A DNA stretch of 63,726 bases, counting the filler, from Octopus bimaculoides (Eukaryota): assembly GCF_001194135.2 (NCBI RefSeq). It is 11 parts of 10 records of this genome, joined end to end, with 100 filler letters (N's around TTAATTAATTAA, not from the genome) between each part and the next. Parts side by side here need not be neighbours in the genome. Positions count along the whole stretch, not along the records: positions 33,522 to 41,909 come from NC_068989.1; 10 more parts are not named here. The stretch is one strand, 5' to 3'. The notes below the pieces were generated by a model. The model made no database searches and had not been told where the DNA came from. It saw nothing but the letters and a program-made list of their open reading frames with translations. The translations under genes and the position numbers were made by a program. Shown piece by piece: positions 34,385-35,871 of the stretch; position 1 is the first letter of the stretch, and each line of letters starts with the position of its first letter.

Positions 34385-35871
34385 ATGATGGAAGGACTGA
34401 AATATATTTTCATAATTTCTCTTTTAAAAATTTACGTTCTTGCGGAAGATCCGATAATTGATACTACCACTGGAACGATTAAAGGATCAACAATCTCAGT
34501 CCAGAATGTTGATCTTGATGTCTTTCTTGGAATACCATTTGCCAAACCTCCTGTTGGTAATCTAAGATTTAAAAGACCAGAGCCAATTGAGCGGTGGAGA
34601 GGTATAAAAGAGACTAAGAAACATATTTCCTCGTGTATACAAGTAGTTGATGCATTTGATAATATTGAAGGTGCAGATTCTTTCAAAGTAAATACTAATA
34701 TAAGCGAAGACTGTCTTTATTTAAACATTTGGGCGCCAACAGAATCCCGAAAGTCCCATTCAAATTTAGCCACAATGATATGGATATATGGGGGTGCACT
34801 TGTTTCTGGGTCAAGCACGCTGGACGCATACGATGGACGATTGTTAGCAGCGACTCAAAAGATTATCGTTGCATCACTTAATTATAGAGTTGGACCCTTC
34901 GGTTTTCTTTCCTTAAATGACGAACGTGCTCCAGGCAATATGGGATTTCTTGATCAAACCCTTGCAGTAAATTGGATTCGTGATAACATTGCATCATTCG
35001 GCGGAGACCCTGATAAACTGACACTGTTTGGACAGAGTTCTGGTGCAATGTCTGTTAGCTTTCATGTTATGTCACCAATTTCTCGAAAATTATTCAGGAA
35101 TGCAATTATAATGAGTGGGATATCTACCACTGATTGGTCAATTAGGTCAAAAGAGGAAAATATTGAAAGAGCGAAAGAAATGGCTGCCTTCTTGAAATGT
35201 CCAACTGAGAACGATAAGGTGATGTTAGATTGCTTTCTAAATGCCGATGCAAACAACTTAGCTGTGGGACAATTTTATAATTTAAAGAACATCACAGAAT
35301 TTCCTTTTTCTCCTATTATAGATAACTATTTCTTACAAAAGAAGCCGAAAGAAACTCTACAGAATAAAGAAATGAAAAAGGATGTGATGATTGGTTTTCT
35401 TAAAAATGAAGGAAGTTTGATGATTGTAATAAGAAACCCTGAATATTTCGCTCCAAACACAAATGTTCCGGTAAACAAATCTATCGCACACAAAATAATG
35501 AGAAATCTAATCGAACCAAAACAATTAAATTCTCTGCAGTTGGATTCCATCTCGTATCTTTATGGTTCTCATGTTGATACCTCTTCTGAAACTGAAAAAT
35601 ACAGATATATATTGGACCAAGTAGCTGGCGATATAATGTTTAAATGTCCTACTATTCACTTTTCCGAGGAATTCAGTACCTATTCCAATGTTTATATGTA
35701 TTCTTTTGAGTATCGTTCAAGAGCTACGCCCTGGCCGGAATGGATGGGTGTGATACATGGAACTGATGTTTATTTCGCGTTTTCCCAAATATTATTAGGA
35801 GAATATTCAGCAGAAGACAAATCTGTGGCAAAAATGGTGTCAAGTTATTTTGCAAACTTTTCCAAATCAGG
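34385..35871 (+). CDS. ACHE-like: Acetylcholinesterase-like carboxylesterase (type-B carboxylesterase/cholinesterase family), large first coding exon, aa 1-496
   Basis: Intact 496-codon ORF. Signal peptide MMEGLKYIFIISLLKIYVLA. Family motifs FLGIPFAKPPVGNLRF, SEDCLYLNIW, WIYGG, NYRVGPFGFL, GNMGFLDQ, FGGDP, GQSSG (Ser218), NEG (Glu342), WPEWMGVIHG (His458). Acceptor TTTCTTTCTTTCAG at 34357 just before the ATG; donor GG|GTAGGA at 35872. Confidence 0.95.

What the first reader, a model, noticed from the sequence alone, without database searches (positions are those of the whole stretch)
34385..35871. AChE-derived enzyme with an intact catalytic triad but a dismantled choline-binding gorge
Seen: an uninterrupted ORF with Ser218/Glu342/His458, Cys pairs 84-110, 272-283 and 421-541, and WPEWMGVIHG identical to Torpedo AChE. 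By-eye alignment (Torpedo numbering) gives W84->F100, E199->Q217, Y70->V, F120->L, Y121->V, W279->F, F288->T, F330->L, F331->M, Y334->I, Y442->T. Established: W84 and E199 form the choline subsite, and Y70/Y121/W279 form the peripheral anionic site. Inference: an active, extracellular, non-cholinergic esterase with an open aliphatic gorge suited to bulky or hydrophobic esters. If the host is an octopus, it could be the enzymatic counterpart of the nAChR-derived chemotactile receptors that lost ACh binding (a ligand-clearing enzyme in suckers or skin), or a salivary/detoxifying enzyme. That would be a second repurposed arm of the cholinergic toolkit.
Basis: partly seen in the sequence, partly recalled or inferred. 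Interest (0 to 1): 0.85.

Follow-up and report, generated by a model that had tools for sequence, protein, structure and literature searches.

The report
Octopus cholinesterase paralog with altered gorge
This is the main coding exon of an already annotated Octopus bimaculoides gene ("cholinesterase 2"), one of several tandem copies of the octopus acetylcholinesterase gene that keep the catalytic machinery but have lost the residues that hold choline. It is probably a general extracellular esterase, but its substrate and tissue are untested.

Summary
Window 34385-35871 is coding exon 1, and 39416-39600 is coding exon 2, of Octopus bimaculoides "cholinesterase 2" (XP_014781044.1). The spliced product is identical to that RefSeq protein. 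The stop codon that ends the ORF is intron read-through, and Cys541 lies in exon 2.

The triad, oxyanion hole and three disulfides are intact.

The gene lies in a tandem array on one chromosome. In an NJ tree it sits inside an octopod-specific expansion that branches from the lineage of the cloned O. vulgaris AChE. It is under purifying selection against its O. sinensis ortholog (dN/dS about 0.5, p=0.002) and diverges no faster than the AChE itself.

"Dismantled gorge" is overstated:
- Y70, Y121 and W279 are already non-Torpedo residues in the octopus AChE, and those positions vary across cholinesterases.
- W84 becomes Phe, which is still aromatic.
- The aromatic count is 7 of 14, against 8 of 14 in BChE.

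The real departures are at four near-invariant positions: W84F, E199Q, F331M and Y334I.

Loss of choline specificity is plausible but unassayed. This is an ordinary family diversification of moderate interest.

The parts
34358..34384 (+). Untranslated start of the exon. It begins after an AG acceptor at 34356-34357 that follows a polypyrimidine tract.
   Evidence: Sequence read. O. sinensis isoforms with an upstream N-terminal extension align colinearly from 34367. The status as 5'UTR is inferred.
34385..35871 (+). Coding exon 1 (aa 1-496, phase 2 at its end). It holds nearly the whole cholinesterase-type catalytic domain.
   Evidence: ORF. Pfam COesterase covers residues 22-496, E=2.2e-137. 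100% tblastn match to XP_014781044.1.
34385..34444 (+). Predicted signal peptide (MMEGLKYIFIISLLKIYVLA|EDP).
   Evidence: Hydrophobic N-terminus shared with all octopod paralogs, including the cloned AChE. It forms a helix at residues 2-17 with low pLDDT in the model. No predictor was run, so this is inferred.
34682..34684 (+). Phe100 codon, at the position of Torpedo Trp84 (the cation-pi choline-binding residue).
   Evidence: Alignment. Trp is present in 98 of 100 aligned non-cephalopod homologues.
35027..35041 (+). Nucleophile elbow G216-Q217-S218-S219-G220. Ser218 is the nucleophile, Gln217 replaces Torpedo Glu199 and Ser219 replaces Ala201.
   Evidence: Glu is present in 100 of 103 and Ala in 99 of 103 non-cephalopod homologues.
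35408..35428 (+). Triad Glu342 followed by G343-S344-L345-M346-I347-V348. Leu345 and Met346 replace Torpedo F330 and F331. Ile349 (35429-35431) replaces Y334.
35756..35758 (+). Triad His458 codon, within WPEWMGVIHG.
35872..39415 (+). Intron 1 (GT at 35872, AG at 39414-39415). It contains microsatellites. No Pfam or Rfam features were found in it.
   Evidence: It is 84-89% identical to the O. sinensis intron.
39416..39600 (+). Coding exon 2 (aa 497-557). It holds Cys541, the partner of Cys421, and the C-terminal Cys556, which aligns near the Torpedo interchain Cys. A GT donor follows at 39601.
   Evidence: tblastn; reading frame and splice sites; alignment.
39601..41909 (+). Start of intron 2. 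The alternative 3' coding exons lie beyond the window piece, at L001 about 21533, 21883-21987 and about 27033-27086.

Best explanation
The interval is the large coding exon of the annotated O. bimaculoides gene "cholinesterase 2" (XP_014781044.1). This gene is one of at least five tandemly arrayed paralogs that arose within octopods from the lineage of the gene cloned as Octopus vulgaris AChE.

The product is most likely a catalytically active serine esterase, either secreted or GPI-anchored.
- Ser218, His458 and Glu342 form the charge-relay triad.
- The backbone NH groups of Gly137, Ala138 and Ser219 form the oxyanion hole.
- Three disulfides and the cholinesterase fold are kept.

Three of the four residues of the catalytic "anionic" site are changed (W84F, F330L, F331M), and so are the adjacent carboxylate (E199Q) and the gorge-mouth residue (Y334I). 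I therefore infer reduced affinity and selectivity for quaternary-ammonium esters and a wider, more aliphatic pocket. On that reading the enzyme is a broad-specificity, BChE-like or carboxylesterase-like enzyme, not a synaptic AChE.

Shown here: gene identity, gene structure, residue states, the paralog array, the phylogeny and purifying selection.
Inferred: catalytic activity, substrate shift and cellular location.
For: Gene identity:
- The piece matches CM046609.1 exactly, and the spliced product equals XP_014781044.1.
- Pfam COesterase at E=2e-137. The best PDB hits are cholinesterases.
- AF2 model pLDDT 90. Foldseek top hits are Torpedo AChE and human BChE, target-normalised TM-score 0.92-0.93.

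Active site:
- Triad, oxyanion hole and disulfides are intact, and the listed substitutions are confirmed.
- W84, E199, F331 and Y334 are present in 98/100, 100/103, 92/103 and 93/103 non-cephalopod homologues, but are F, Q, M and I here.
- The CAS is defined as Trp86, Tyr133, Tyr337 and Phe338 in human numbering (PMC12447245).

Gene family:
- Other paralogs lie about 95 kb upstream and about 60 kb downstream on the same chromosome.
- In O. sinensis the AChE lies about 230 kb from the ortholog of this gene.
- NJ tree support: cephalopod clade 99%, octopod clade 99%, derived paralog clade 84%.

Selection:
- dN/dS is 0.47-0.61 depending on method; Fisher p=0.0023.
- The orthologs are 88.5% identical, the same as the AChE ortholog pair at 88.8%.

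Location:
- Annotated isoforms end in a GPI-like hydrophobic tail or in short tails with no such stretch.
Against: - There is no enzymatic or expression data.
- Phe at position 84 can still make cation-pi contacts. From my own knowledge, aromatic replacement of human AChE Trp86 is far milder than Ala replacement (Ordentlich et al. 1993/1995). I could not check this in the paper library.
- D72, Y130, W432, W114, W233 and F290 are kept.
- BChE has only 8 of 14 aromatic gorge residues and still hydrolyses choline esters.
- dN/dS of 0.5 indicates only moderate constraint.
Confidence: 0.6

Rival explanations
1. It is still a working cholinesterase: a second, BChE-like enzyme that hydrolyses acetylcholine or other choline esters at physiologically useful rates, possibly acting as a bioscavenger or at non-synaptic sites.
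For: - It is nested in the cholinesterase clade, and its best structural and sequence matches are AChE and BChE.
- Position 84 is aromatic (Phe).
- D72, Y130, W432, W233 and F290 are retained.
- The aromatic count is 7 of 14 against 8 of 14 in BChE.
- It has H-type (GPI) and soluble C-terminal isoforms like true AChEs.
Against: It departs at four positions that are near-invariant in cholinesterases: W84, E199, F331 and Y334. Three of the four CAS residues are changed. BChE keeps all four of the near-invariant positions.
Confidence: 0.25
2. The enzyme is a sensory-tissue (sucker or skin) esterase that clears hydrophobic ester ligands of the nAChR-derived chemotactile receptors, analogous to insect odorant-degrading esterases. 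Alternatively it is a salivary or venom esterase.
For: - It is an extracellular enzyme with a more aliphatic gorge.
- The expansion is octopod-specific.
- The E199->Q/H change gives GQSxG or GHSAG elbows, as in insect JHE and the odorant-degrading JHEdup and Est6 (PMC5626784).
- AChE-like transcripts were reported in anterior and posterior salivary glands of Paroctopus digueti, with the paralog not identified (PMC12607849).
Against: There is no expression data for this gene. No paper links cholinesterase paralogs to suckers. The GQSxG motif is a single-residue convergence, and the protein is not in the JHE clade. The salivary-gland report cannot be assigned to this paralog.
Confidence: 0.1
3. 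It is a non-catalytic cholinesterase-like protein (adhesion or structural, as in neuroligin, gliotactin and glutactin) or a decaying duplicate.
For: dN/dS of about 0.5 is fairly relaxed. Sliding windows over codons about 200-350 give dN above dS, though on very few synonymous changes. Neighbouring paralog gene models are fragmentary or chimeric.
Against: - The triad, oxyanion hole, six cysteines and the reading frame are intact in O. bimaculoides and O. sinensis, and in the O. vulgaris protein model.
- Overall dN is significantly below dS.
- Divergence is no greater than that of the AChE.
- Known CLAMs lack the nucleophilic Ser, which is present here.
Confidence: 0.05

Closest known systems
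Octopus vulgaris acetylcholinesterase (AHG95983.1 / A0A075D677) and its O. bimaculoides and O. sinensis orthologs
   Same: 63% identity. It shares the leader peptide, the two-exon layout ending in ...FSKSG|NPN..., the three disulfides, the triad and a GPI-type tail. In O. sinensis it lies on the same chromosome as the ortholog of this gene, about 230 kb away. It already shares Y70V, Y121M, W279F, F288L and G119A.
   Different: The AChE keeps W84, E199, Y at position 330, F331, Y334 and Y442, giving 11 of 14 aromatic gorge residues. This gene has F, Q, L, M, I and T at those positions, giving 7 of 14.
Vertebrate butyrylcholinesterase (e.g. PDB 1P0I, 6EMI)
   Same: It is the best PDB sequence hit (E=4.7e-113), with TM-score 0.93. 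It is a cholinesterase paralog with a reduced aromatic lining (8 of 14), an enlarged acyl pocket and broad specificity.
   Different: BChE retains the Trp82, Glu197, Phe329 and Tyr332 equivalents that this protein has lost. It arose by an independent duplication.
Insect juvenile-hormone esterase and the odorant-degrading esterases JHEdup and Est6
   Same: They belong to the same Pfam family. Gln or His replaces the Glu before the nucleophilic Ser (GQSAG, GHSAG; PMC5626784). They are extracellular enzymes acting on neutral hydrophobic esters, so they model what this protein might work like.
   Different: They belong to a different clade of the family and are not close homologues. Only the single elbow residue is shared. 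No substrate data exist for the octopus protein.
Cholinesterase-like adhesion molecules (neuroligins, gliotactin, neurotactin, glutactin)
   Same: They have a cholinesterase fold recruited to non-cholinergic roles.
   Different: From established knowledge, they have lost the catalytic Ser or other triad residues. Here the triad is intact.

Membership tests
Type-B carboxylesterase/lipase family (Pfam PF00135, alpha/beta hydrolase) | A profile match above the curated cut-off. | tested here: met
   459.5 bits against a cut-off of 27, E=2.2e-137, covering residues 22-496.
Type-B carboxylesterase/lipase family (Pfam PF00135, alpha/beta hydrolase) | A GxSxG nucleophile elbow and a Ser-Glu-His triad. 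| tested here: met
   G216-Q-S218-S-G220, Glu342 and His458 align to Torpedo S200, E327 and H440.
Type-B carboxylesterase/lipase family (Pfam PF00135, alpha/beta hydrolase) | The alpha/beta-hydrolase fold. | tested here: met
   AF2 model with pLDDT 90. Foldseek gives TM-score 0.92-0.93 to Torpedo AChE and human BChE.
Cholinesterase clade (AChE/BChE lineage) | Phylogenetic placement among cholinesterases, and the three conserved disulfides. | tested here: met
   The top 60 PDB hits listed are all cholinesterases. The protein is nested in a cephalopod cholinesterase clade with 99% support. C84-C110, C272-C283 and C421-C541 align to Torpedo 67-94, 254-265 and 402-521.
Cholinesterase clade (AChE/BChE lineage) | A choline-binding Trp (Torpedo W84) and the adjacent Glu (E199). 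| tested here: not met
   Phe100 and Gln217 occupy these positions. W is present in 98/100 and E in 100/103 other homologues.
Cholinesterase clade (AChE/BChE lineage) | Hydrolysis of choline esters and inhibition by eserine. | not testable with these tools
   This needs recombinant enzyme kinetics.
Acetylcholinesterase sensu stricto (EC 3.1.1.7) | An aromatic gorge: the 14 Torpedo residues, including CAS W84/Y130/F330/F331 and acyl pocket F288/F290/W233. | tested here: not met
   7 of 14 are aromatic. CAS is F/Y/L/M and the acyl pocket is T/F/W. Site definitions are from PMC12447245.
Acetylcholinesterase sensu stricto (EC 3.1.1.7) | A peripheral anionic site (Y70, D72, Y121, W279, Y334) and substrate inhibition. 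| tested here: not met
   The residues are V87, D89, V140, F297 and I349, so only Asp is kept. The kinetics are not testable here. The octopus AChE itself has V, D, M, F, Y.
GPI-anchored (H-type) cholinesterase subunit | A C-terminal exon with a small-residue omega region followed by a hydrophobic tail, and alternative C-terminal exons. | tested here: inconclusive
   Isoform X1 ends ...CSVASGSQNDWTFYMKILTSVTAILFIFMLFQKILF. X3 and X4 have other short tails. These exons were located in L001, outside the window piece. No GPI predictor or experiment was available.
Juvenile-hormone esterase family | A GQSAG elbow plus membership of the arthropod JHE clade. | tested here: not met
   The elbow is GQSSG here and GQSAG in O. 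sinensis. However, the protein is nested in the cholinesterase clade, and the other JHE motifs (RF, DQ, GxxHxxD/E) are also present in Torpedo AChE. The resemblance is limited to one residue.

The most novel reading that the evidence does not exclude
Octopods have built a tandem family of catalytically intact cholinesterase paralogs that have lost their choline-binding residues and are secreted or GPI-anchored. This gene is the member that has lost the choline-binding Trp itself. The family could serve a lineage-specific extracellular chemistry: clearing hydrophobic ester ligands at chemotactile sensory epithelia, or acting in saliva or venom. That would make it a second cholinergic component repurposed alongside the nAChR-derived chemotactile receptors.
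Probability: 0.1. Interest if true: 0.75.

Novelty: new member of a known kind. Interest (0 to 1): 0.4.

Why it matters
If the inferred substrate shift is real, this array would be a clean natural experiment. It shows how a cholinesterase gorge is converted step by step into a general esterase pocket, with graded intermediates sitting side by side in one genome: the AChE has 11 aromatic gorge residues and the paralogs have 5 to 8.

It also warns that "cholinesterase" or "AChE" annotations, and AChE activity or toxicology biomarkers in octopus, may pool several different enzymes. Tissue expression would show whether the expansion is tied to octopod-specific biology such as suckers or salivary glands.

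I found no paper describing the expansion. The gene itself is already in RefSeq under an automatic name.

Tried and rejected
I did not attempt read laying, so expression was not tested.
- A second protein search with the C-terminal 162 aa, meant to find spliced transcript fragments, returned one unrelated partial hit from only 8 candidates. It is uninformative.
- Exact look-ups of P0001 and P0006 were not on record. I therefore could not compute dN/dS for the AChE ortholog pair and used amino-acid identity as a proxy.
- Literature searches for an octopus cholinesterase expansion, for "cholinesterase 2" with octopus, for accession numbers, for sucker transcriptomes and for W86F all found nothing relevant.
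- The third coding exon is not in the window piece. It lies further downstream in L001.
- Intron ORFs had no credible Pfam hits. One had looked like a reverse-transcriptase fragment by eye, and I rejected that idea.
- Rfam found nothing. The introns share almost nothing with neighbouring loci.
- Rejected: pseudogene or non-catalytic adhesion protein, because the triad and reading frame are intact and dN is below dS.
- Rejected: JHE membership, because only one motif residue is shared.
- Gorge volume could not be measured because model coordinates are not exposed.

Full report
**What is in the sequence.**
The piece 33522-41909 carries one long ORF on the + strand, 34385-35875, of 496 aa. It matches Pfam COesterase over residues 22-496 at E=2.2e-137. 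Its best matches among solved structures are butyryl- and acetylcholinesterases, at E=1e-113 to 1e-91 and about 40% identity.

- Ser218 in GQSSG, Glu342 in NEGS and His458 in WMGVIHG.
- Cysteines at 84, 110, 272, 283 and 421.

The ORF's stop codon (TAG, 35873-35875) is intron read-through. The exon ends at 35871 in ...TCA GG|GTAGGA. A second coding exon, 39416-39600, follows an AG at 39414-39415 and precedes a GT at 39601. It continues the frame as NPNDGDCSDC...SICSFW...EPPCS and supplies Cys541.

**Identity of the gene.**
The piece is an exact substring of Octopus bimaculoides chromosome CM046609.1 (GCA_001194135.2), at about 20,915,338-20,923,725. The spliced product is identical to XP_014781044.1, "cholinesterase 2 isoform X1", 591 aa.

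RefSeq lists four isoforms that differ only after ...EPPCS:
- X1 and X2 end in a hydrophobic tail of the GPI-signal type (SGSQNDWTFYMKILTSVTAILFIFMLFQKILF).
- X3 ends in a short Cys- and Trp-rich tail.
- X4 ends in a 5-residue tail.

Their 3' exons lie downstream of the window piece. This mirrors the alternative C-terminal splicing of true AChEs. Together with the hydrophobic N-terminal leader, it supports an extracellular enzyme, either membrane-anchored or secreted. That is an inference; I ran no signal-peptide or GPI predictor.

**Checking the residue table.**
I verified my Torpedo californica AChE sequence against the PDB. It is identical over residues 1-537 to the chain shared by 1amn, 1ea5 and others.

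It also adds G119->A138 and A201->S219. Both are oxyanion-hole positions that act through backbone NH groups.

The following are retained: D72 (D89), Y130, W114, W233, F290 (F306), W432, the triad and the three disulfides.

The AlphaFold2 model is confident (pLDDT 90, pTM 0.88). Its closest solved folds are Torpedo AChE and human BChE, with target-normalised TM-score 0.92-0.93 and rmsd 2.3-2.5 Å.

**Context: a tandem, octopod-specific expansion.**
The homologue search returned a set of octopod proteins 51-89% identical to the ORF. They include the cloned O. vulgaris AChE, at 63%.

In O. bimaculoides the paralogs lie on the same chromosome:
- One at 20.815-20.822 Mb (- strand).
- This gene at 20.916-20.933 Mb (+ strand).
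- Further copies at 20.996-21.039 Mb.

In O. sinensis the AChE is at 55.80-55.84 Mb and the ortholog of this gene at 56.07-56.11 Mb of CM016868.1.

I built a neighbour-joining tree from 535 columns with 200 bootstraps. It shows:
- A cephalopod clade (99%).
- Within it, two unnamed transcriptome-derived sequences as sister to an octopod clade (99%).
- Within the octopods, the AChE and one Argonauta gene branch first.
- A derived clade (84%) then splits into an Argonauta-only expansion (100%) and an Octopus expansion (70%).
- In the Octopus expansion, this gene pairs with its O. sinensis ortholog (100%).

This is not the ordinary AChE. A second, more distant cholinesterase also exists in octopus (P0044, 39% identity). 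It groups with gastropod and bivalve AChE-like genes, so which gene is the synaptic AChE is not settled here.

**How unusual the substitutions are.**

| Protein | Aromatic residues at the 14 Torpedo gorge positions |
|---|---|
| Torpedo AChE | 14 |
| Octopus AChE | 11 |
| Primate BChE | 8 |
| This protein | 7 |
| Other octopod paralogs | 5-8 |

Y70, Y121 and W279 are already V, M and F in the octopus AChE, and F288 is already non-aromatic there. These positions, together with Y442, vary widely among 103 non-cephalopod homologues. Their state says little.

Four positions that are almost invariant in that sample are changed here:

| Torpedo position | Conservation in non-cephalopod homologues | Residue here |
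|---|---|---|
| W84 | 98 of 100 aligned | F |
| E199 | 100 of 103 | Q |
| F331 | 92 of 103 | M |
| Y334 | 93 of 103 | I |

Position 330 is usually Y or F and is Leu here. By the definition of the catalytic "anionic" site as Trp86, Tyr133, Tyr337 and Phe338 in human numbering (PMC12447245), three of its four residues are altered. One of the three acyl-pocket residues (F288->T) is altered.

Some of these changes are shared with sister paralogs: E199Q or H, loss of Y334, and F330L. Among the Octopus genes, W84F is unique to this lineage.

**Is it maintained?**
Against the O. sinensis ortholog, over 556 codons:
- NG86 gives dN=0.052, dS=0.101 and ω=0.51.
- YN00 gives ω=0.47 and ML gives ω=0.61.

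The counts are 65.5 non-synonymous differences over 1313 sites, against 33.5 synonymous differences over 355 sites. Fisher's exact test gives p=0.0023.

Orthology is supported by 84-89% identity across the intron and upstream DNA. The ortholog pair is 88.5% identical in protein, the same as the AChE ortholog pair at 88.8%. This copy is therefore not decaying faster than the AChE.

Sliding windows give dN above dS for codons about 200-350. That rests on very few synonymous changes, so I draw nothing from it.

**Most likely mechanism.**
It is a Ser218/His458/Glu342 esterase with a normal oxyanion hole and the cholinesterase scaffold. It is displayed outside the cell as a GPI-anchored protein, possibly a disulfide-linked dimer, or as a soluble form.

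Three changes weaken binding of a quaternary ammonium group:
- The Glu199 carboxylate is lost.
- Trp84 is replaced by a smaller aromatic ring.
- F330, F331 and Y334 are replaced by aliphatic residues.

The F288->T change enlarges the acyl pocket. The most likely outcome is a broad-specificity esterase with poor efficiency on acetylcholine (confidence about 0.6).

The main rival (about 0.25) is that it remains a BChE-like choline esterase. Phe can still give cation-pi binding, and BChE shows that few aromatic residues are needed.

The E->Q change gives a GQSxG elbow, like that of insect juvenile-hormone esterases. A sister paralog has GHSAG, as in the odorant-degrading JHEdup and Est6 (PMC5626784). 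This is a one-residue resemblance, not family membership.

I found nothing for or against a sucker, skin or chemotactile role. No paper in the library mentions this gene, "cholinesterase 2" in octopus, or a cholinesterase expansion in cephalopods.

[quoted passage not shown] The four RefSeq isoforms suggest transcript support, but that rests on my general knowledge of NCBI's annotation pipeline and was not checked here.

**Verdict.**
The gene is an already annotated but unstudied member of an apparently undescribed octopod cholinesterase expansion. It is a new member of a known kind: cholinesterase-derived esterase paralogs. Interest is moderate and would rise sharply only with tissue-specific expression or substrate data.

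Noticed in passing
L001 about 21533, 21883-21987 and about 27033-27086 (outside the window piece; window = L001 + 24384): Three alternative 3' coding exons give four RefSeq isoforms: a GPI-type hydrophobic tail with or without one Val, a short Cys/Trp-rich tail (VGQSALLLCWCWYC), and a 5-residue tail (DGRQI). 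This echoes the alternative anchored and soluble C-terminal splice forms of true AChEs.
   Followed up: partly
L003 (O. bimaculoides CM046609.1 20.986-21.049 Mb) and protein P0130 (O. vulgaris): Neighbouring paralog gene models are artefactual. P0005 joins an N-terminal exon fragment, an exon-2-like piece and the rest of another copy; the first fragment's translation ends in X, probably at an assembly gap. P0130 (1189 aa) fuses two adjacent paralogs. The true copy number of the array is therefore uncertain.
   Followed up: partly
window 34388-34630 compared with L002 10001-10240: The first 80 or so codons of exon 1 are much more alike between this gene and paralog D than the 3' half. Third-position identity is 0.75-0.78 against 0.45-0.65. 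This could reflect gene conversion at the 5' end of array members.
   Followed up: partly
window 33522-33813, 36093-36190, 39666-39803, 40739-40912, 41608-41673: Dense microsatellites flank and interrupt the gene: (AC)n and (GT)n upstream, a perfect 30-bp x 3.3 repeat in intron 1, (AC)n just after exon 2, (TAC)x45 immediately followed by (TAA)x14, and (TC)n(TA)n. They create the long low-complexity pseudo-ORFs listed.
   Followed up: yes
window 36500-38500 (intron 1): This stretch is richer in G+C (0.43-0.48 against about 0.35 elsewhere) and has several 80-100 aa ORFs on both strands. None has a credible Pfam hit, and the stretch is not repeated in the neighbouring loci. Its nature is unexplained.
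   Followed up: partly
window 35000-35430 (codons about 200-350): In sliding windows against the O. sinensis ortholog, dN exceeds dS (ω about 3) over the region that holds the acyl loop and gorge-mouth residues. dS there is only about 0.017, so the ratio rests on very few changes.
   Followed up: no
protein P0044 (O. sinensis, not in the window): Octopus has a second, distant cholinesterase, 39% identical to this gene. It keeps W84, E199, Y121, F290, F331 and Y334 and groups with gastropod and bivalve AChE-like genes. It is therefore unresolved which octopus gene is the synaptic AChE.
   Followed up: partly
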